A program made the position numbers and the translations under genes. From NCBI GenBank assembly GCA_013416795.1, contig RQSC01000006.1, forward strand, positions 131,018 through 195,017: a stretch of 64,000 bases of DNA, given 5' to 3'. The notes under the pieces are model-generated. The model ran no database searches, was not told the origin of the DNA, and was given only the letters and a program-made list of their open reading frames with translations. The stretch is from Prasinococcaceae sp. CCMP 1430 (lineage: Eukaryota > Plantae > Prasinodermophyta). The number at the start of each line of letters is the position of its first letter. Positions within the stretch are counted from its first letter, which is position 1. Shown piece after piece: positions 53,164 through 64,000 of the stretch.

Positions 53164-56100
53164 ATGAATGTGGGGTCTGCCGTCGAGAAACTCGTGCGAG
53201 GTGTGGGGCTGGAGGGCGCGTTCCGGTCGTGGCCACCGTGGCGCCAGGAACGTGGAGCCAATGTGTCGGAAGATGCCGAGGCGCAGACTTTGAAGCATCG
53301 CAGACGTATCGAGCGACTCACGAAAGCCAAGGCTAAGGCGACCGCAGATGCGGAGGCGGCCGAGTTGCGCATTGCCAAGCTGGAGGCAAAGCTCGAGGAG
53401 GCTCGCGCGCAGCAGCCGACGCAGCGAGAGGGCGTGAACTGCAAGCAGGTAGATGGCGATAGCAAGGCCACACTTCCCGAACTAAAACGGAAGAAGAAGA
53501 AAACACAAAGTCATATGCCACCGAAACAGCCCGCGAGCCCAACAGAGAAAAAAAGGAAGCCATTACACAAAAGTCCGGCACACGAGGGCGCCTGCTGGCC
53601 CGCCAGGCCCGGGAGGGCGCAAACTCGGCTCGGAGCACTGCACACGCAGGTACCTGATCATTTCTGCTGGTCTTCCGATCCTAAGTCAGAGTATCCCAGC
53701 AAAGACTACGGCTGCGAGATCGACAAGCTGCGCGCCACGCGCGCTGCGGAGCTCGCTCGTGCCGCGCTGGACAGGGCGCGGTGCGCACGGGATGCTGCCG
53801 AGGCAGCCGCCAAGTCTGTGCGCATTGAGTACATCATCGCTGGAGATACAGATGACCACCATCCACCCCGCAATCCTGCTGGCGGAAACATCGCAGGCGA
53901 AGGCAACTTGTGCACATTGGCGGATAATTCGGGGAAGGAGGCGAAGAAGGCACAAGATAACCTGGATAAGGTGGTAGAGCTGGTCAAAGACGCAACCCAT
54001 TCTGCCAACGAGACGACAAAACTCGGTGCTGCCCGTGACGAGGCCGAGAGGAGGGAAAAGTCAGACAAGACAGTGACAGATGCTCAGACTGCAGCCATGT
54101 TTGCAGACAAAGCTACGGACGCAGCCAACGACGCGCGGCGCCTGGCGAACGTTGCCTGGGACCTCGGGTCAGTGAAATCAAAGTCTGAGCAGGAGCTTCA
54201 GGAGGCAGTGACGGCCCTCCTCAACGAGTCCTGCAGACCGCCATTCGCTGAGTGCATCACCGAGCAGTACCGCACGGTCAAGCTCGAGGTCCGGCAGCTT
54301 GGACACAAGAAAGAGTACGCAAAGGCGTCTACTCACTTCAAGTTCCTCATGCGACTTTGTGATGACGAGACGACAGGCAGTCCCGTCGACTGTGACACCG
54401 AACGCGCGTGCCTCTGCGAAGAAATTATGGCAGGCACGTGGAAGGTCGAGCGACTGCTCAGAAAAGGTTACGCTCGTCAGTGGGCAATTCTGCGCGCCGA
54501 TGACGAGATCTTTGGCATCCAAGGCGCGTTCGATGATGGTTCTGAGATATGGGGCGTGCTTCCTCGGCGGTGCTTCAAGAACGACCAAGCCGCGTTCAAC
54601 GCATACGACGAAGCTGACAGGAAGGTCGACACACTCTTGGATAGGATTGACGAGAACGAAGGGATCGAACAAGAACTAAAGGGTGTAGAGACTGTTCTGA
54701 AGAAGCTGCAGATCCTGGCACAGTATTCCAAGGCAGCCATGCTGGAAGCAGACCGAGGCTGCGGCGCACACCAGAAGCTGCCAGTGGTGAGAAATTGCAG
54801 GAATCGCGGGTTGCACCCTGTACTTGAGACAGTCGTGAAGCTGCCCCTCATTGGCCCCCTCATCGAGCGCTGTCACGTAGTCGAGGTGGAGATGCGCGGG
54901 CGCGTGTTCAGGCCACGACGCCGTTTGAGCTCAAAAGAGCACCAGGCGTGTGAGCTCTACAGTGACAGCCTTGAATACGACGAAAATGAGGACAAGGAAC
55001 GCTCATCTCAAGGCCTCCACGATCAGGACGCAAACTCGGAGATCAATGAAGAGAATGCCCACACGGACGAGCAGAAGCCAAATACGACGCTCTACAGTGA
55101 CAGCCTTAAAGACGACGAAAATGAGGACAAGGAACGCTCATCTCAAGGCCTCCACGATCAGGACGCAAACTCGGAGATCAATGAAGAGAATGCCCACACG
55201 GACGAGCAGAAGCCAAATGCGACCGATGTGCAACCTGGCGAGGTATCCTTTTTTCGCAACTACTTCAATTTGTCGAACCTCGAGACATTGGAGGCCGACA
55301 GGATAGTCGACAGCTTTGCCAGCCGAGGCGCGCACTATGGGTTGCTTTTGTGGTCAAACGGTGATCTCCGCATGAACGAAGAGACGCAAAATTTCGTGCG
55401 CCAGCTCAGGCACGATGCGAGAGAGCACATGGAGACCGCGCTGGAGGGGTACCTTCGCGGAGCAGCGAATTCGACGGCCATATACCAGGCATGGGCCACG
55501 GCTATGGCAGGCTACATCCTCATCCAAGGCACATCGCGCTCTTTCCCGTTCCGCGACGAATCACGTGGCCTGCGACTATTGTTGCGCAGCGCGGTGCTTG
55601 GTAGCCCCTTCGGCATGTTTCTGTGTGGCCGAATGTACATGCACGGGTCGGGCGTCGAGCGAAACGTGGAAAGGGCGATGAAGTTCTACAGCTGCGGTGG
55701 AGCCGCCGGCTCGCGGGCGTGCTTGTTCCAGCTGGGGTTTTTGCAACAATACGGCCTCAAAGATCATGTCGAAAAAGACACGGAACAGGCGTTGATATAC
55801 TACCGCAAGGCCGCTACCGAAGACACGTTCGCCGACCCAGAGGAGCCCCTGCTTGAGTCGAGTATCCTGGCTTCGATGCTGCACGAAAATGTTGGAATTG
55901 ACTTCACTGAGGACACCCTTGGTGGCAATGTCGGCTCGTTGCTCACCTGGTCACTCGCGGGACAGGCTTTTCTCTTCAGCGCGGCAACCTTGGTGATGAA
56001 CAACAGCCAGCCGTTCCACTACGCCCCGTTGCTGATAATCCTTCCCATCGTCGGAATCGTCCTCGCGTTTAACATGCTATTGTCGAACGTAGTCATGGCA

Positions 56101-56598
56101 AGACGAAACTCCCGGCGACGACGTGAGCTACTGAAGCTGTACCATTGGAAGCGATTCGCGTACGAGATGGCCACACGAGACTACGTTCTACCTCCCGTGC
56201 TCGATGGGATCCCAGGCACTGCGATCGCCCTCTATGGGGTCATTACGTATGTAGGCTATCCGGTCTGGTACGTGTTGGGCGGTATCTTCTTCCCACTCTT
56301 TGGCATCAGCAAGAAGCACAGGAAGGAGATCGAGCGCAAGCGCAGGCCCGAGATGGTCTTGCACCTGTCCAATTTGGTAGAGGTGGTCAACGTGGTCATC
56401 GCGATCACTTTTCTGGTTGCCTGGGCCGTCGTACTCGCGAATGAGGTAACCTTGCGGGACCGCGGCTGTAGCAACTGGTGGGACAACGTCTGCATGAACA
56501 GCGCTGTCAAGTGCGCAACTGAGGACTCTGAGGACCAGTGCAACGGCGAAGTGCCATTCCGTTTCGAAGCGGAAGTAACCAATATTCTCTCGGGGTAG
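53164..56598 (+). CDS. Large protein: coiled-coil N-terminus, acidic 45-aa duplication, Sel1-like repeats, C-terminal multi-TM region
   Basis: ORF longer than 1100 codons. Sel1 motifs GMFLCGRMYMHGSGVERNVERAMKFY and LFQLGFLQQYG...VEKDTEQALIYYRKAA. About 4 hydrophobic helices follow. Start uncertain (frame open from 52909). Confidence 0.8.
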   Translation: MNVGSAVEKLVRGVGLEGAFRSWPPWRQERGANVSEDAEAQTLKHRRRIERLTKAKAKATADAEAAELRIAKLEAKLEEARAQQPTQREGVNCKQVDGDSKATLPELKRKKKKTQSHMPPKQPASPTEKKRKPLHKSPAHEGACWPARPGRAQTRLGALHTQVPDHFCWSSDPKSEYPSKDYGCEIDKLRATRAAELARAALDRARCARDAAEAAAKSVRIEYIIAGDTDDHHPPRNPAGGNIAGEGNLCTLADNSGKEAKKAQDNLDKVVELVKDATHSANETTKLGAARDEAERREKSDKTVTDAQTAAMFADKATDAANDARRLANVAWDLGSVKSKSEQELQEAVTALLNESCRPPFAECITEQYRTVKLEVRQLGHKKEYAKASTHFKFLMRLCDDETTGSPVDCDTERACLCEEIMAGTWKVERLLRKGYARQWAILRADDEIFGIQGAFDDGSEIWGVLPRRCFKNDQAAFNAYDEADRKVDTLLDRIDENEGIEQELKGVETVLKKLQILAQYSKAAMLEADRGCGAHQKLPVVRNCRNRGLHPVLETVVKLPLIGPLIERCHVVEVEMRGRVFRPRRRLSSKEHQACELYSDSLEYDENEDKERSSQGLHDQDANSEINEENAHTDEQKPNTTLYSDSLKDDENEDKERSSQGLHDQDANSEINEENAHTDEQKPNATDVQPGEVSFFRNYFNLSNLETLEADRIVDSFASRGAHYGLLLWSNGDLRMNEETQNFVRQLRHDAREHMETALEGYLRGAANSTAIYQAWATAMAGYILIQGTSRSFPFRDESRGLRLLLRSAVLGSPFGMFLCGRMYMHGSGVERNVERAMKFYSCGGAAGSRACLFQLGFLQQYGLKDHVEKDTEQALIYYRKAATEDTFADPEEPLLESSILASMLHENVGIDFTEDTLGGNVGSLLTWSLAGQAFLFSAATLVMNNSQPFHYAPLLIILPIVGIVLAFNMLLSNVVMARRNSRRRRELLKLYHWKRFAYEMATRDYVLPPVLDGIPGTAIALYGVITYVGYPVWYVLGGIFFPLFGISKKHRKEIERKRRPEMVLHLSNLVEVVNVVIAITFLVAWAVVLANEVTLRDRGCSNWWDNVCMNSAVKCATEDSEDQCNGEVPFRFEAEVTNILSG
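54955..55218 (+). repeat. In-frame tandem duplication, period 135 bp (45 aa)
   Basis: LYSDSL(EY/KD)DENEDKERSSQGLHDQDANSEINEENAHTDEQKPN twice, at 54955 and 55090. Confidence 0.97.
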
Positions 56599-56957: not shown

Positions 56958-57988
56958 CTACGCCTTGGAGGCGCCGCGTCGGCGGCCGACGACAAGCTTC
57001 AGCCGGCTACTCGTTCTATGTTCCGGCGACCGGAGGCACTCGAGGAACGCGGCGGCGCGGGCGGGCAGCGCGTCGCCGAAGTACTCGGCCGGAAACTTCA
57101 TCCGCTCCAGCCGCCCCCGCCAAGCCTCGAGCACCTCCGGAGAAGCGGGCCCGTCGAACGCCAGCTCCGCGTCCGTCCAGTCGCTCTGCAACACGACCTC
57201 CAGCCCCGCCGAGCGCATCGCGTCCGCCACCGCCCTCCCGGCGAAGGCGTCGTAGCCGTGCCCCTCCGCCAGCGCGCGCTCCATCCGGCGAAACTCCTCC
57301 GCCCCGCCGTCGGCCTGGGGCTCGTGGCACGAGAAGAGGCCGTCCGTCTCGACGACGGCCAGGAGGCCGCCGGGGCGCAGCAGGGACGCCCAGGAGCGCA
57401 GCAAGGGCTCCATTTCTGCGCCGAAGTACTGCACCTGTCGTTGGTTTGCATTTGTGTGTGTCACGCGCGCTGCTTGCGTCAGCGCACGGTGGTCAAGTAG
57501 CAGCGGCACGGCGTTGCACGGAGTTGGTAGATGCAATAGCGGAAGTGTCCGACGAAGACATTAGCACCAGCGCACATAGCGACCCTCGTCCACTCGACAC
57601 TCACCGCGAACGAGCTCCAGATGAGGTCCGCCGGCCGCTCAAGCCCAAGCGCGGCCAGCGAGAGGCCCCTCAGGTCGTGCCGCACGAAGCGCACGCCCGT
57701 ATGCGCCGCCTCGGCGGCGTCCAGCATCGCGGGGTCGCCGTCGACGCCGACGACCGGGTCCCAGCCCCGAGCCCGCAGCAGCGCGGCCACCTCGCCCGTC
57801 CCGCAGCCCATGTCCACCGCCGCCAGCGGCGCAGAGAAAGGAGCGCCGGGGCAGCCGCCCCCGTCCAGATCGGCTTCGCCCCGCAGCGCCACCACGGCGT
57901 CGAGCATGGTGGGCCACTGCCGCCAGGTAGCCTGCGCGCGCCGCTGCGTGGCTGTGGCTTCTTCGGCGCTGTCCTTGGATGTCGACAT
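56958..57988 (-). CDS. Class I SAM-dependent methyltransferase; exons 57988-57605 and 57434-56958
   Basis: VDMGCGTG, VVGVDGDPAMLDAA, DLIWSSFA|VQYF, LLRPGGLLAVVE. Confidence 0.9.
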
Positions 57989-58174
57989 GCGTCTCCGCGG
58001 CGGCGCGGACGGCGGCGGGTGGCGTGACCGAGAGCACGGCGGGCGAGGTGGCGTTGGTGTATAGCAGATGAGCGCGCGGTGCCGCTGCGCCAACACCACC
58101 GGCGGCGTCCGCATCGCGCGGCGCGCGGATCCTGTGGCGCCCGCAAAGCGCGACGCTTACGCGCGCCGCCGCGA

Positions 58175-58364: not shown

Positions 58365-58903
58365 TGTCAAGCGGGGATGCCTATTTCATGTGCGCTCACT
58401 TCGCACAGGTGCACACACGCACGCGCGCGCACTCACACGAACGCGTACGCACGCACGCGCACATGCGCGCACGCCTGAGCGTGCACACCAGGGCACAGGC
58501 ACACACACACACACACACACAAGTCATGTGAATGTGCGTGCTGCATTTTGTTTCTTGGTCAAGACGCGTGTGGCTTGTCGAAGCTGTCGCAGCCTTTTCG
58601 CAGCGCCACGTGCTGAAAAAAAAGTTTGCACTGACAGTGCACACTGCGCCACACCGTGCGCGTGCGCCGCTGGCAAGGAAGACAGCGGGGAGGGGGCGAG
58701 AGGGCGCGCGCACGTGGTCCCATCCTTTCCCTGCCTGCGCGTGCGCCCACCGTCAGCGGCGGTCTCGTGCCGCGGAGGCGTGAGGGCGGTGGCGCTGGCT
58801 GGTGCCGCACATTATTGTTGACTTCGCTGCTGTCTATTGCGTCGTTCTCTGGCCAGCGGTCGTGGTCCAGCCGCAGCCCGCAGCCTCGCGGGCTCCGTCA
58901 TCG

Positions 58904-61900
58904 ATGGCTCCTGCACGCGCGTCCGCGGGTGCGTCAGCGGCTGGACCGAGTGGGTCTCAAGCTGCTTCCGGCGCGGTTCGCGTGGTGCGCATCGCCAATG
59001 ACGAGGACAAGTGGTGGGCGAAACTCAAGAAAACACTCGGAGATGCGGCTTTCAAGGCGTTAGACTGGGGACCGGACGTGCTCGAGGTTACTGGCATCGT
59101 GTTCGAATTCACGGGCGATCTGACCAAGCTTGCGATTGACGCCACGGACGGCACCGTGCCCTTCGTGAGCATTGCCAACGCTCTGGTCACGCGGGTGCGC
59201 GACAAAATGGACGAGCTGAAGCAGGTAGACGATCTGGCGGCCAGAAAGGCAAGCTGGCGCGTCGATGCGTGGCACTCAGTGATCGAGAGCATCCCGAAGG
59301 CGGGTTATCCGGCGGAGGACGACACATATGTCAAAGTTGTCGACGCTCTCGAAGAGCTAGCGCTGCTCGCGATCAAGTGGGACTCCAAGGCATTGCACAA
59401 AAGACTGTACTGGGGCGTGGCGTCTAGATACCGCGAAGACCTCGACAAGGCCATCGAGAAGCTGGATGTGCAGTATAGTGCACTTTTAGGTAAGGCGCTT
59501 ATCATCGTTTTCGGACGGATTGAAAACATCGGCAATTCCACAGCCGCCAGCACCTCTGAGTGCATCCACAACCTGCCCGGTGGCCTGCCGACGCTGCTGG
59601 GCCGCGAGGCCGAGCTTGAAGATCTGCTCAAAGCATTGGCGACGAAAGGGACGGTCACATCGCTCACGGGCATCGCCGGCGTTGGCAAGTCGCAGCTTGC
59701 GTATCGCTGCGCGTACAGCTTTGCCTTCGATGGGCCGCCTACGACAGGGGGGCGCTTCTCATGGATCCTGGACGCATCAAACGAGGACAACCTATCGAAG
59801 AGCTATGCCGACGCACTGGTGGAGCTCAGCGGCGAGAAAGCGGAGACTTTCGAAAAAGACGCCGCCGGGCACAAGTTGCCGCCGCGGGTTTTAGCAGATA
59901 AGCTGCTCACCGAGATCGCTCGCAGTGGGCGTAGCAGCATGCTCGTCTTCGACAACGTCAAGGACGACGAGGACGACGGCGGGGTCAAGTGGCTGCGGCA
60001 GCGCTACTTCTCTTCGCTGGCACGCGCAGCAAGCGTGCACGTACTGATCACGTCGCGCAGCGATGCTTTTCGGGACGAACAAGACGGTCTCGGCCACATC
60101 TGCCAAGTGCCGGTAAATGAGCTGAGCAAGGATGTCAGTATCGCCCTGCTGCTGGGTGAAAAGAACGCGGGCGCTGCCGATTGCAAAGCCGCTGAATCAA
60201 TCTATGAGCGGCTTGGTGGCCACGCGCTAGCGCTGAGCGTTACACGCAAATACATTTCCAGCGATGAGGCCAAAGAGATGTACGGTAATCGAGCGTTACA
60301 GGAGGAGGCTGAGCGCCTCGAACAGGGCGAGCGCCCGGCAAGCGCCGACGCAGCCGTGGCCGCGGCGGTGGCGAGGGCGCTGGAGATGGTGCGCCAGAAG
60401 CACCAACGAGCGTGGGCGATCCTCGGCGTGGCTGCCCATATACACCCTAAGGACATGCCCCAGACCTTACTGCTTCGCGCAGCAGAGGGCTGCACTGCCG
60501 CAGACCTGCGCGTGCTGCTGAGGCTCAACCTGCTGCAGTGGGGCGCGTCGGGGCAGGCGCAGATGCGTTCGATGCATCGCTTGCTCCAGGGTGCCGTGCG
60601 TGAGAAGCAGGGCGCTCACGCGGCGTTGGCTGCAGTATGGGCCGAGATCGCGTTGTTCGAGGAGTCAAATGTGTCCACCTGGGCGTATGCTCGGTCCTTG
60701 ATGCCGCACGTCGAGGCGATGCGCGAGTCTGTATTGACGGGCGGCGTATATGATTCGATTCAGCTTGGATTCGTCAATAATGCAGAGGGCTTCATATGCG
60801 AGCAATTGCTCGGTGACTACGACCGGGCGCTGCAGGCGTACGATGTGACGCTGCGAGTCGAGCGCGAGGTGCTCGGCGACGACCATCCGGAAGTCGCAAC
60901 GACGCGCAACAATATTGGGTCGGTATATCACGCCCAAGGACGCCACGCCGAGGCGCTGCAGGAGTTCGACGAGGCGCTGCGAGTCAGGCGCGAGGCGCTC
61001 GGCGACGCCCACACGGACGTTGCACAGACGCGCAACAATATTGGAATGGTATATCACGACCAAGGGCGCCACGCCGAGGCGCTGCAGGAGTACGAAAAGG
61101 CGCTGCGAGTCAGGCGCGAGGCGCTCGGCGACGACCATCCGAGCGTTGCAACGGCGCGCAACAATATTGGGATGGTATATCGGGCCCAAGGACGCCACGC
61201 CGAGGCGCTGCAGGAGTACGAGGAGGTGCTGCGAGTCAAGCGCGAGGCGCTTGGCGACGACCATCCGGACGTTGCAGAGACGCGCAACAATATCGTGTCG
61301 GTGTATTGGGCCCAAGGACGCCACGCCGAGGCGCTGCAAGAGTTCGAGGAGGCGCTGCGAGTCAAGTGCGAGGCGCTCGGCGACGACCATCCGCGCGTTG
61401 CAACGGCGCGCAACAATATTGGGATGGTATATGACGCCCAAGGACGCCACGCCGAGGCGCTGAAAGAGTACGAGGAGGTGCTGCGAGTCAAGCGCGCGGC
61501 GCTCGGCGATGACCATCCGAGCGTTGCAACGACGCGCAACAATATTGGCTCGGTATATGACGCCCAAGGACGCCACGCCGAGGCGCTGAAAGAGTACGAG
61601 GAGGCGCTGCGAGTCTGGCGCGAGGCGCTCGGCGACGACCATCCGCGCGTTGCAACGGCGCGCAACAATATCGGGTCGGTATATGACGCCCAAGGACGCC
61701 ACGCCGAGGCGCTGCACGAGTTCGAGGAGGCGCTGCGAGTCAGGCGCGAGGCGCTCGGCGACGACCACCCGGACGTTGCAGAGACGCGCAACAATATCGT
61801 GTCGGTGTATTGGGCTCAAGGACGCCACGCCGAGGCGCTGCGGGAGGTTGAGGAGGCGCTGCGAGTCTTCCGCTTTGTCTTCGGCGACGACCATCCCAGC

Positions 61901-61960
61901 GTTGCAACTGCGCGCAACAATGTTGAATATGTACGTCGTGCTCAGGGACGGCACGGTTAG
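58904..61960 (+). CDS. NLR-like STAND protein: helical (MLKL/HeLo-like) N-terminus, NB-ARC, 42-aa TPR array
   Basis: NLP...GREAEL, Walker A GIAGVGKSQLA, Walker B LVFDNV, sensor VLITSR, LGGHALAL, SMHRLLQ, then LGDDHP.VA..RNNIG.VY..QG repeats. Intronless. Confidence 0.93.
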   Translation: MAPARASAGASAAGPSGSQAASGAVRVVRIANDEDKWWAKLKKTLGDAAFKALDWGPDVLEVTGIVFEFTGDLTKLAIDATDGTVPFVSIANALVTRVRDKMDELKQVDDLAARKASWRVDAWHSVIESIPKAGYPAEDDTYVKVVDALEELALLAIKWDSKALHKRLYWGVASRYREDLDKAIEKLDVQYSALLGKALIIVFGRIENIGNSTAASTSECIHNLPGGLPTLLGREAELEDLLKALATKGTVTSLTGIAGVGKSQLAYRCAYSFAFDGPPTTGGRFSWILDASNEDNLSKSYADALVELSGEKAETFEKDAAGHKLPPRVLADKLLTEIARSGRSSMLVFDNVKDDEDDGGVKWLRQRYFSSLARAASVHVLITSRSDAFRDEQDGLGHICQVPVNELSKDVSIALLLGEKNAGAADCKAAESIYERLGGHALALSVTRKYISSDEAKEMYGNRALQEEAERLEQGERPASADAAVAAAVARALEMVRQKHQRAWAILGVAAHIHPKDMPQTLLLRAAEGCTAADLRVLLRLNLLQWGASGQAQMRSMHRLLQGAVREKQGAHAALAAVWAEIALFEESNVSTWAYARSLMPHVEAMRESVLTGGVYDSIQLGFVNNAEGFICEQLLGDYDRALQAYDVTLRVEREVLGDDHPEVATTRNNIGSVYHAQGRHAEALQEFDEALRVRREALGDAHTDVAQTRNNIGMVYHDQGRHAEALQEYEKALRVRREALGDDHPSVATARNNIGMVYRAQGRHAEALQEYEEVLRVKREALGDDHPDVAETRNNIVSVYWAQGRHAEALQEFEEALRVKCEALGDDHPRVATARNNIGMVYDAQGRHAEALKEYEEVLRVKRAALGDDHPSVATTRNNIGSVYDAQGRHAEALKEYEEALRVWREALGDDHPRVATARNNIGSVYDAQGRHAEALHEFEEALRVRREALGDDHPDVAETRNNIVSVYWAQGRHAEALREVEEALRVFRFVFGDDHPSVATARNNVEYVRRAQGRHG

Positions 61961-62040: not shown

Positions 62041-62723
62041 GATCGCGCTTGTTGGCTTCGCAGCAATGACAAACATGCCATTCAACGTACACACACGTGC
62101 ACTGTACCACCGCACGTACGTACCCTGGGAGCTATGCCTGCACGTGTGTGTTGCGAAGCTCCCGCCTCCCCTGCTGCGCGGGCCGGCTTCGCACACAGGC
62201 ACGGGCGGTGCGGCTGGTGGAGCGGTGGTGCCAATGCTGTCATTGCGACGAGCGCGTGCCCGCACCGGGGTCCGGGGCACTCCTCTCGCCGCGATGCGGT
62301 CGCACGCCCAGAGTTCAACCCAGCTTTTCAGCCCGTCCACGCCGCCACGGCCACAGTCAGCGCCTCGGGCGTGCCCGTGGGGGTGAGCGCGAGCGCCGCC
62401 TTTTCGCGCAGTTGCTCCGCGCATTTGCATGTACTTACACATGTACATTATACGGTGGATGCTCTCAAAGCTTCCCCATCCGTTCTATTCTTTCGCCAGG
62501 AAAGACGCGCGACGGTGCGCGTCCACCGTCGAGTGCGCGCGGTCCGCGCGAGCCGCCGAGGGGGCGGGTGCTGCTCGCGCAAGCTCCGCGAAATTACATC
62601 ACATTTTCACACACATAATTTACGCTGTGCGAACTCAAAGAGTCCAATTCCGAACGTTTTTTTTGCCGGGAAAGCGCCGGGCGGGTGCCGGTCAGATTTT
62701 TCCGGCGCGGATCGCGATTCTCC

Positions 62724-63020
<297 letters not shown>

Positions 63021-63117: not shown

Positions 63118-63496
63118 ATGGCGACTGCGACTGCGATGGCGCCGCTGCGTCAGCGTACGAGCCGGCGGCATCCTCGGCGGGCGCGTGCGACGCGCTCCGA
63201 GTGGGTCACCGCCGCCGCCGCGGCGGTGGTGGCCGCGTGTGTGCTCTCCGCGGCGCCCGTCGCGCGCGCGCACTCCACGGGCATCCACGCGGGGCTCATC
63301 CACGAGCCGGGCGTCGACCCGCTCAACCCCTTCGTCGGCGAGGCGGCGCAGAACGCAGACGTGTCCATCCCGGGCGGCGCGCTCTGCCCGGACTGCACCT
63401 TCGACGTGGAGGTGCGGGAGCGCGCGTGCGGGCGAGTGCGCGGGTGTTGGCGTCGACGTGCGCTCGCCGACGGATGCTGACTATGCACGGGCGCTT

Positions 63497-63535
<39 letters not shown>

Positions 63536-64000
63536 CACACACACACACACACACGCACACACACACACACACACACACACTTACACACACACACACACAT
63601 TCACACTTGCACACACTGACACCCACACTGACACGAACGCTGACGCCCACACAGGCGGTCTGCGGCAACGACCTCGTGACGTACCTCAACATCTGCTGGG
63701 CGAACTGCGCGGGCACCACGCTTCGCTCCGAGGGCGCGTGCGTGGAGGGCCTCGAGGAGATCGCCAAGGAGGAGCTGGGACAGACGGACGACGACACGGC
63801 CTTGCTCGTGGGGGACGACGCCGACGCGCAGGAGGAAGGGGTCCCGGCCGTGCCTGCCGGTGAGGGAGGCGGCGACGACGACCTCGGGGGCGCGGCGGTC
63901 GGCGCGGCCGGGCCGCAGCCCGCCGATGCGGTCGCGGACTACGAGGGCGCGGGCGAGGGGGGTGGCGAGGACGACTCGGACGTGCCGTCGCCGCCGCCGC
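63118..64000 (+). CDS. Secreted or membrane-anchored Kazal-domain protein; intron 63412-63654, 3' partial
   Basis: Hydrophobic leader, then CPDCTFDVE|AVCGNDLVTYLNICWANCAG.....EGAC (Kazal Cys pattern) and an acidic tail. Confidence 0.85.

What the first reader, a model, noticed from the sequence alone, without database searches (positions are those of the whole stretch)
58904..60800. NLR with an MLKL/HeLo-like N-terminal domain in a green alga
Seen: about 200 aa of amphipathic helices (VPFVSIANALVTRVRDKMDELK...VVDALEELALLAIKW...KRLYWGVASRYREDLDKAIEKLD) precede an intact NB-ARC of the fungal/actinobacterial TPR-linked type. Known: MLKL, HeLo and RPW8 four-helix bundles execute cell death. Inference: a complete effector-NOD-sensor receptor distinct from plant NB-LRRs.
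Basis: partly seen in the sequence, partly recalled or inferred. Interest (0 to 1): 0.8.

Follow-up and report, generated by a model that had tools for sequence, protein, structure and literature searches.

The report
Algal NLR-like switch, orphan helical head
A GC-rich marine green alga (apparently Prasinoderma) carries an intact three-part "NLR-like" receptor gene (helical head, NB-ARC nucleotide switch, variable TPR repeats) of the kind known from fungi and bacteria. I could not show that its head is an MLKL/HeLo-type cell-killing bundle.

Summary
An uninterrupted 1018-codon ORF (58904-61960, +) encodes three parts:
- a ~225-aa all-helical head;
- a STAND NTPase with every NB-ARC motif in place (GIAGVGKS, LVFDNV, TSR, GGHALAL, MHR);
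- nine 42-aa TPR_10/TPR_12 repeats.

The NOD falls below Pfam's NB-ARC cut-off on its own. Its nearest bacterial relatives (Actinomycetota and Chloroflexota, 26-28% identity) pass that cut-off. A joint profile hits Apaf-1, Sr35, Roq1, NRC1 and CED-4, and no NACHT protein.

The TPR units are 83-94% identical in DNA, and their amino-acid changes pile up at about 10 fixed codons, as in a fungal-type variable sensor.

The MLKL/HeLo reading of the head is unproven:
- no Pfam hit, whole or in pieces;
- no relative among 1.84 billion representative proteins;
- no PDB sequence hit;
- two AlphaFold runs at pLDDT 38 and 41;
- no transmembrane-like segment.

The only support is a language-model lead (0.89 to a fungal cluster in which 36% of members carry MLKL_N). 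Apart from its last helix, the head does not even resemble the heads of its own paralogues.

The scan noted paralogous genes on other pieces of this genome before, with the same open question. Expression could not be tested. Verdict: a new member of a known kind, of moderate interest.

The parts
58904..61960 (+). Intronless CDS: 1018 codons plus a TAG stop, encoding the three-part NLR-like protein
58904..58984 (+). Ala/Ser/Gly-rich leader, aa 1-27, predicted non-helical
58985..59578 (+). All-helical head, aa 28-225. It is an orphan at sequence level. Core helices lie near aa 87-106, 110-129, 140-165 and 170-210
59414..59608 (+). Last head helix (ASRY..DL motif) plus the LPxGLPxLxGRE linker. 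This is the only head segment with significant similarity to the paralogues
   Evidence: BLASTP E 2e-4; z 4.8, 0 of 500 shuffles
59579..60823 (+). NB-ARC-class STAND NTPase module, aa 226-640
59669..59692 (+). P-loop / Walker A, GIAGVGKS
59939..59959 (+). Walker B, MLVFDNV. The D-N form is shared with the bacterial NB-ARC-TPR relatives
60044..60061 (+). RNBS-B / sensor I, LITSRS
60215..60235 (+). GLPL-like motif, GGHALAL
60569..60589 (+). MHD-like motif, SMHRLLQ. The His is conserved in the bacterial relatives
60827..61957 (+). Nine 42-aa (126-bp) TPR_10/TPR_12 units. They are 83-94% identical in DNA, with changes concentrated at about 10 codons per unit

Best explanation
This is an intact, intronless gene for a STAND/NLR-like receptor with three parts: an orphan helical head, an NB-ARC nucleotide switch and a TPR array. 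The mechanism is inferred from the families involved. The TPR array, whose repeats are kept alike in DNA but differ at fixed surface codons, would hold the protein closed and bind a ligand. Ligand binding would allow ADP/ATP exchange on the NB-ARC module (P-loop, Walker B, sensor I and MHD-type His all present). That in turn would drive oligomerisation and bring the N-terminal heads together, so that the heads act by induced proximity. What the head does is not shown. It is a soluble all-alpha domain that evolves much faster than the NOD, or was swapped. A membrane-directed or cell-death output is the most likely guess, but only a guess. Shown: the gene, its architecture, the motifs, the NB-ARC class and the repeat variation. 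Inferred: ligand sensing, oligomerisation, head output and any immune role.
For: Gene and architecture: the ORF and TPR hits. NOD: weak NB-ARC and NACHT hits, and NCBIfam FxSxx_TPR at E 1.3e-20 over aa 230-606. Paralogues at 40-46% identity in the EukProt Prasinoderma coloniale set and on TARA ocean scaffolds. Bacterial relatives that pass Pfam's NB-ARC cut-off and carry TPR or TIR. The joint profile hits Apaf-1 at 1.3e-12, and also Sr35, ADR2, Roq1, NRC1 and CED-4, but no NACHT protein. All motifs are conserved. Repeat variation: across all codons dN is about equal to dS (0.138 vs 0.144). At 10 codons dN is 0.59 against dS 0.21, and at the remaining codons dN is 0.04 against dS 0.13. The 10 codons were chosen after looking, so this is descriptive. 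Fungal NLRs pair NB-ARC preferentially with TPR and swap heads between similar NODs (PMC4986451).
Against: No exact product is on record in public gene calls. The NOD alone is below Pfam's NB-ARC cut-off (20.5 vs 23.5 bits), and by itself or with its paralogues it hits nothing in the PDB. The Apaf-1 link therefore depends on adding the bacterial rows. Nothing shows a ligand, oligomerisation or an immune role. The head has no assigned fold.
Confidence: 0.6

Rival explanations
1. The head is a very divergent member of the MLKL_N / HeLo / HeLo-like / RPW8-CC four-helix-bundle superfamily. When the NB-ARC module oligomerises, the head permeabilises a membrane and kills the cell.
For: A protein-language-model feature search places aa 30-215 at 0.89, with 176 shared features, next to a fungal cluster in which 36% of members carry PF22215 MLKL_N. 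A streptophyte MLKL_N cluster appears at 0.81, and 7 of the 10 best family-bearing hits share one family or clan. The core has four predicted helices of 19-35 residues just before the NOD. HeLo-like and Goodbye-like bundles are the commonest heads of fungal NLRs, and CC/RPW8-like bundles head NLR-like genes of streptophyte algae (PMC10197012; PMC10952240). From my memory only, the last helix (KRLY..ASRY..L..I.KL) resembles the pattern of the last bundle helix of MLKL.
Against: No Pfam hit to MLKL_N, HeLo, RPW8, Rx_N, Goodbye or SesA at E up to 10, whether the head is scanned whole or in pieces, and none for the paralogue heads either. No hit in 1.84e9 representative proteins. No MLKL, HET-S or CC-NLR chain in PDB searches by sequence or by profile at E up to 10. 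Both models are unusable, and Foldseek returned only generic helical proteins at E 0.5 or worse. No N-terminal helix has membrane propensity, and no MADA- or MAEPL-type start was seen (by eye). By the tool's own figures, a feature score of 0.8 or more arises a third of the time with shuffled proteins, and 0.9 or more in 4-10 of 100.
Confidence: 0.3
2. The protein is a non-immune STAND regulator. Its head would be an adaptor or oligomerisation domain that recruits partners, as in many bacterial NB-ARC-TPR signalling or transcription regulators, and would have no cell-death output.
For: The nearest non-algal relatives are bacterial NB-ARC-TPR or TIR-NB-ARC proteins of unknown role. The best family hit is to a bacterial TPR-protein model. 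The head is soluble and has no membrane-type segment.
Against: Repeat variation focused at fixed codons, multiple fast-diverging paralogues and head turnover are the hallmarks of non-self-recognition NLR families (PMC4986451). No DNA-binding or enzymatic domain was detected.
Confidence: 0.15
3. The gene is a silent or decaying paralogue: still an open frame, but no longer used.
For: No exact product is on record. The head has no detectable relative even among paralogues. Another agent of this scan reported a decayed paralogue elsewhere in this genome (s1-406004; not checked by me).
Against: The ORF has 1018 codons without a stop (P about 4e-14). All catalytic motifs are intact. The codon-position GC pattern holds in all three parts, the head included.
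Confidence: 0.1

Closest known systems
Paralogous NLR-like genes of Prasinoderma coloniale (EukProt PRCOL_00002404 = P0003) and of TARA ocean scaffolds (P0001, P0002, P0004)
   Same: They share the three-part plan. NOD identity is 46-51% with identical motifs, the TPR units are the same 42-aa type, and the last head helix plus the LPxGLPxLxGRE linker are shared.
   Different: The rest of the head shows no significant similarity (z = -0.24; hhalign aligns only 18 columns). The paralogues carry a Cys-rich loop and an intron inside the head, while the window gene has neither.
Fungal NB-ARC-TPR NLRs with HeLo-like or Goodbye-like heads (Dyrka et al. 2014, PMC4986451)
   Same: A helical head, NB-ARC preferentially joined to TPR, highly similar repeats with variable positions, and heads exchanged between similar NODs.
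   Different: No fungal sequence was retrieved or compared here. The head matches no HeLo or MLKL_N model. The host is a green-lineage alga.
Bacterial NB-ARC-TPR and TIR-NB-ARC STAND proteins (Plantactinospora, Longispora, Anaerolineae), and the FxSxx-COOH system TPR protein model NF040586
   Same: NOD identity is 26-28% over about 290-335 residues. The D-N Walker B, TSR, LPLA-type and xLHR/MHR motifs are shared. L004 also has TPR_12 repeats.
   Different: The NF040586 score is 73.5 bits against a cut-off of 300, so this is not a member. The bacterial heads differ (TIR, ParA-like or none), and here the gene is in a eukaryote.
MLKL four-helix bundle, HET-S HeLo, and plant CC/RPW8 NLR heads
   Same: An N-terminal all-alpha domain of about 130-200 aa placed ahead of a regulatory module. 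A language-model lead points to MLKL_N.
   Different: There is no sequence or profile match and no usable model. No N-terminal membrane-inserting helix or MADA/MAEPL-type motif was seen.
NB-ARC-TPR candidate receptors of the brown alga Ectocarpus (Zambounis et al. 2012, as cited in PMC10197012) and plant TNPs (TIR-NB-ARC-TPR; PMC10952240)
   Same: NB-ARC joined to TPR in photosynthetic eukaryotes, with the TPR part diversified.
   Different: Ectocarpus diversifies by exon shuffling, whereas this gene is intronless and has tandem in-frame units. TNPs carry a TIR head. Neither was compared by sequence here.

Membership tests
NB-ARC (AP-ATPase) clade of STAND NTPases | Walker A, Walker B, sensor I (RNBS-B), GLPL and MHD-type His, in that order | tested here: met
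   GIAGVGKS 256-263, MLVFDNV 346-352, TSR 383-385, GGHALAL 438-444, MHR 557-559. These columns are conserved with the bacterial NB-ARC proteins.
NB-ARC (AP-ATPase) clade of STAND NTPases | Score above Pfam PF00931's gathering threshold | tested here: not met
   20.5 bits against 23.5. NACHT is also below its threshold (24.6 against 26.7).
NB-ARC (AP-ATPase) clade of STAND NTPases | Profile-level homology to solved NB-ARC proteins and not to NACHT proteins | tested here: met
   Profile A4 (algal plus bacterial rows) hits Apaf-1 at 1.3e-12, Sr35 at 1e-6, and also ADR2, Roq1, NRC1 and CED-4, with no NACHT chain. The algal rows alone give no hit. The bacterial rows pass the Pfam NB-ARC threshold.
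Fungal/bacterial-type NB-ARC-TPR NLR-like receptors | Three-part head-NOD-TPR architecture with TPR_10/TPR_12 units | tested here: met
   TPR_12 at E 4e-136 and TPR_10 at 6e-112, with 8-9 stretches after the NOD.
Fungal/bacterial-type NB-ARC-TPR NLR-like receptors | Highly similar tandem repeats with variation at a few positions | tested here: met
   8.7 units of 126 bp with 86% matches. Changes concentrate at about 10 codons, where dN is 0.59 against dS 0.21; elsewhere dN is 0.04 against dS 0.13 (positions chosen after looking).
MLKL_N / HeLo / HeLo-like / RPW8 / CC four-helix-bundle heads | Significant match to a family model (PF22215, PF14479, PF05659, PF18052 and others) or to a solved member | tested here: not met
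   No such family at E up to 10, for the whole head, for pieces of it, or for the paralogue heads. No such chain in PDB searches by sequence or profile.
MLKL_N / HeLo / HeLo-like / RPW8 / CC four-helix-bundle heads | Four-helix-bundle fold | tested here: inconclusive
   The AlphaFold models reached pLDDT 37.9 (single sequence) and 41.3 (7-row alignment), so only secondary structure is usable. Foldseek against the PDB gave nothing below E 0.5. The feature-search lead of 0.89 to a cluster bearing MLKL_N stands as a lead only.
MLKL_N / HeLo / HeLo-like / RPW8 / CC four-helix-bundle heads | N-terminal helix with membrane propensity, or a MADA/MAEPL-type motif | tested here: not met
   The maximum 19-residue hydropathy is 1.19, and it lies at aa 195-201, at the C-terminal end of the head. 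The N-terminus is an Ala/Ser/Gly-rich leader. The motif check was by eye only.
MLKL_N / HeLo / HeLo-like / RPW8 / CC four-helix-bundle heads | Cell death or membrane permeabilisation on oligomerisation | not testable with these tools
   This needs an experiment.
Plant NLR (NB-ARC-LRR) | C-terminal leucine-rich repeats | tested here: not met
   No LRR family appears among the Pfam hits shown (best 25 of 39). The C-terminus is TPR.
FxSxx-COOH system TPR protein (NF040586) | Score above the NCBIfam cut-off | tested here: not met
   73.5 bits against 300, and only the NOD part of the model is matched.

The most novel reading that the evidence does not exclude
The orphan head is a very divergent MLKL/HeLo-type membrane-attacking bundle. 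In that case the third green-plant phylum (Prasinodermophyta) would hold a family of fungal-style 'HeLo-like-NB-ARC-TPR' cell-death receptors whose heads turn over so fast that paralogues no longer resemble each other. That would place bundle-headed NLR cell death in a unicellular marine picoalga. It would also push the pairing of this executioner fold with NB-ARC back to, or across, the base of green plants.
Probability: 0.3. Interest if true: 0.65.

Novelty: new member of a known kind. Interest (0 to 1): 0.38.

Why it matters
NLR-like receptors in unicellular algae are few and poorly described. Published surveys mention small numbers of NLRs in chlorophytes and charophytes (PMC12856790, PMC10952240). 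The full-text searches found no paper that describes this Prasinoderma NB-ARC-TPR family. An intact copy with a variable TPR sensor supports the idea that regulated non-self sensing of the fungal/bacterial NB-ARC-TPR type exists in an early-branching green lineage that faces marine viruses and bacteria. The head is the interesting unknown. It has no detectable relative anywhere and differs even from the heads of its paralogues. This gene family is therefore a natural set in which to ask how NLR output domains are replaced. If the head proved to be a cell-death bundle, it would give a testable case of programmed cell death machinery in a picoalga.

Tried and rejected
**Searches on the head that found nothing**
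- Word search on aa 1-225: no hit.
- Exhaustive phmmer of aa 21-235 against 1.84e9 representative proteins: 0 hits.
- Pfam on the whole head, on four pieces of it, and on the paralogue heads (whole, then five pieces): no helical-bundle family.
- PADLOC on the head plus NOD: nothing.
- PDB by sequence, for the window head, the P0003 head and profile A5: only chance-level rows.

**Structure**
- AlphaFold2 on the single sequence gave pLDDT 37.9. With the 7-row alignment A5 it gave 41.3.
- Foldseek against the PDB with the second model returned only generic helical proteins at E 0.5 or worse. I treat that as uninformative.
- I did not run the atlas or VIA fold searches, because a model at this confidence gives meaningless matches.

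**Attempts to find more family members**
- The alignment-based word search with A1 returned nothing, not even the known paralogues, so that search was wasted.
- JGI metagenome scans with the NOD alignment and with the head protein: no relatives.

**Paralogue heads**
- hhalign and a shuffled Smith-Waterman test show that only the last helix is alike. The upstream columns of A1, A2 and A5 are therefore guesses. A1 and A5 put the VPFV helix in different registers.
- The paralogue genes on L001 and L002 are spliced inside the head. I used their first-exon pieces only as separate rows, by reference, and left the joined step out.

**Expression**
I did not try to obtain reads by any other route.

**Rejected readings**
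- A NACHT-type NOD: Pfam alone is ambiguous, and the profile search settles it as NB-ARC.
- Membership of the FxSxx_TPR family: the score is far below the cut-off.
- A chance ORF in GC-rich DNA: P is about 4e-14.

Full report
**What is there**

The window is GC-rich (0.56-0.74 in 2-kb bins). From that ATG it encodes 1018 residues and ends in TAG.
- About 1050 stop-free codons at this base composition would arise by chance with P of about 4e-14.
- All three parts show the coding pattern GC1 > GC2 < GC3, with GC3 of 0.70-0.74.
- No second copy of the head or the NOD lies in the window (tblastn).

**C-terminal part**

Pfam gives TPR_12 (E 4e-136) and TPR_10 (E 6e-112) in 8-9 stretches from about aa 640. 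Tandem Repeats Finder finds 8.7 units of 126 bp at 60826-61925 with 86% matches and no indels.

Cut into 42-aa units, the seven well-kept inner units are 83-94% identical in DNA. Their differences are 174 non-synonymous against 70 synonymous codon differences, and the non-synonymous ones fall on 17 of the 42 positions, most heavily at positions 3, 5, 12, 22, 25, 26, 32 and 35.

By NG86, over the first eight units:

| Codons | dN | dS |
|---|---|---|
| All | 0.138 | 0.144 |
| The 10 most variable | 0.59 | 0.21 |
| The rest | 0.04 | 0.13 |

The variable codons were picked after looking, so this describes the pattern and does not test it. It is the pattern reported for repeat sensors of fungal NLRs (PMC4986451). 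It confirms in passing another first-stage note on this array (s1-539160).

**Central part**

On its own the NOD is weak in Pfam. NB-ARC scores 20.5 bits (cut-off 23.5) and NACHT 24.6 (cut-off 26.7). NCBIfam FxSxx_TPR matches aa 230-606 at E 1.3e-20, but far below its cut-off. Neither the protein nor a profile of it with its paralogues hits any PDB sequence.

A word search on aa 226-640 found four relatives at 40-46% identity. One is EukProt PRCOL_00002404 (Prasinoderma coloniale). The other three come from ENA assemblies; I fetched the contigs of two of them (P0001, P0004), and both are TARA ocean metagenome scaffolds.

A scan of bacterial and archaeal genomes found relatives at 26-28% identity over about 290-335 residues in Plantactinospora and an Anaerolineae MAG, and over a shorter stretch (about 225 residues, E 1e-5) in Longispora. 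Two of these ORFs pass Pfam's NB-ARC threshold. One is TIR-NB-ARC and the other NB-ARC-TPR_12.

In the joint alignment the motifs line up as follows:
- P-loop GIAGVGKS
- Walker B LVFDN
- TSR
- the GLPL-like motif
- the MHD-type His, as MHR here and LHR or LHP in the bacteria

A profile of that alignment hits Apaf-1 (1.3e-12), Sr35, ADR2, Roq1, NRC1 and CED-4, and no NACHT protein. The NOD is therefore NB-ARC class, of the bacterial TPR-linked kind. This rests on transitive homology through the bacterial rows. I retrieved no fungal sequence, so 'fungal type' is untested.

**The head, aa 1-225**

Aa 1-27 is an Ala/Ser/Gly-rich leader. Both AlphaFold runs predict helices through aa 31-212, with four core helices near 87-106, 110-129, 140-165 and 170-210. 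Their confidence is too low to trust any packing (pLDDT 37.9 for the single sequence and 41.3 with a 7-row alignment). Foldseek with the better model returned only generic helical proteins at E 0.5 or worse.

Every sequence-level test of the MLKL/HeLo idea was negative:
- No Pfam family at E up to 10 for the head, and only unrelated chance rows for four sub-segments or the paralogue heads.
- Nothing in the word search.
- Nothing among 1.84 billion representative proteins read exhaustively by phmmer.
- No MLKL, HET-S or CC-NLR chain in PDB searches by sequence or by profile.
- No segment with membrane-type hydropathy. The maximum is 1.19, near aa 200.

The one positive sign is a protein-language-model feature search. 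Aa 30-215 score 0.89 (176 shared features) against a fungal cluster in which 36% of members carry PF22215 MLKL_N. They score 0.88-0.89 against two unannotated Basidiomycota clusters and 0.81 against a streptophyte MLKL_N cluster. By the tool's own figures, shuffled proteins reach 0.8 a third of the time and 0.9 in 4-10 of 100, and none of this was measured for parts of proteins. It is a lead, not a test. My recollection that the last helix resembles the last bundle helix of MLKL is also only a lead.

**Head against paralogue heads**

BLASTP aligns only the last helix and the linker into the NOD (ASRY..DL with ATRY..EL, then LPxGLPxLxGRE; E 2e-4). hhalign aligns 18 columns there. In a shuffle test the last helix scores z = 4.8 (0 of 500 shuffles reach it), while the remaining 143 residues score z = -0.24.

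So a NOD that is about 50% identical is joined to heads that are no longer recognisably alike. Either the head diverges very fast or it was replaced upstream of a retained last helix. Head exchange between similar NODs is documented in fungi (PMC4986451). The paralogues also have a Cys-rich loop, and an intron just after ...APW[LI]xPVAM inside the head. The window gene is continuous there. I used the paralogues' first-exon pieces only as separate alignment rows and did not join exons.

**Context**

Upstream on the same strand lies a long ORF with Sel1 repeats (53170-56595). On the opposite strand lies a methyltransferase-domain ORF (57479-58114). Neither is a known partner of NLRs, and I did not test the 'immunity island' idea of another note. 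No exact product of the NLR ORF is on record in public gene calls, so the public gene model may differ or be missing.

**Comparison with what is known**

NB-ARC-TPR receptors with helical heads and variable repeats are well described in fungi (PMC4986451; PMC10197012). NB-ARC-TPR genes are known in the brown alga Ectocarpus (cited in PMC10197012) and in bacteria. Plant TNPs are TIR-NB-ARC-TPR. Streptophyte algae have NLR-like genes with CC/RPW8-like bundles, and chlorophytes a few NLRs (PMC10952240; PMC12856790). Full-text searches found no paper that describes this family in Prasinoderma.

Other agents of this scan followed up paralogues on other pieces of the same genome. They reached the same position: an NLR-like switch with an unassigned head (s1-389842, s1-399971).

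**Verdict**

This is a new member of a known kind, and an orphan, fast-turning head is its only unusual feature.

Noticed in passing
L001:9441-10100 and L002:1123-1800: The paralogous NLR-like genes on the TARA scaffolds have an intron inside the head domain, just after ...APW[LI]xPVAM. Prokaryote-style gene calling there split off the first exon as a separate small 'gene', so P0001 and P0004 start too late. EukProt PRCOL_00002404 (P0003) is spliced correctly at this point but breaks off at ...VSTWAP, before the TPR array.
   Followed up: partly
window 53170-56595 (+): A long ORF has Sel1 repeats (E 5e-14), hydrophobic stretches near its C-terminus, and an almost exact internal duplication of about 50 aa (LYSDSL..DENEDKERSSQGLHDQDANSEINEENAHTDEQKPN, twice). 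It sits in a stretch of lower GC (0.56-0.62) than the rest of the window (about 0.70).
   Followed up: partly
window 56958-58114 (-): Two overlapping minus-strand ORFs lie between the Sel1 ORF and the NLR gene. The upstream one carries a SAM-methyltransferase domain (Methyltransf_25, E 1e-9). They are probably two exons or a frameshifted gene model.
   Followed up: no
window 62600-63000: Long (GT)n/(AC)n microsatellite tracts flank a short run of N (an assembly gap) just downstream of the NLR gene. More such tracts lie at 58400-58530 and 63480-63620.
   Followed up: no
L003:1390-5409: The Plantactinospora relative is a four-part protein: a ParA/MinD-like P-loop domain, TIR_2, NB-ARC and DUF7779. 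This is an unusual bacterial STAND architecture.
   Followed up: no
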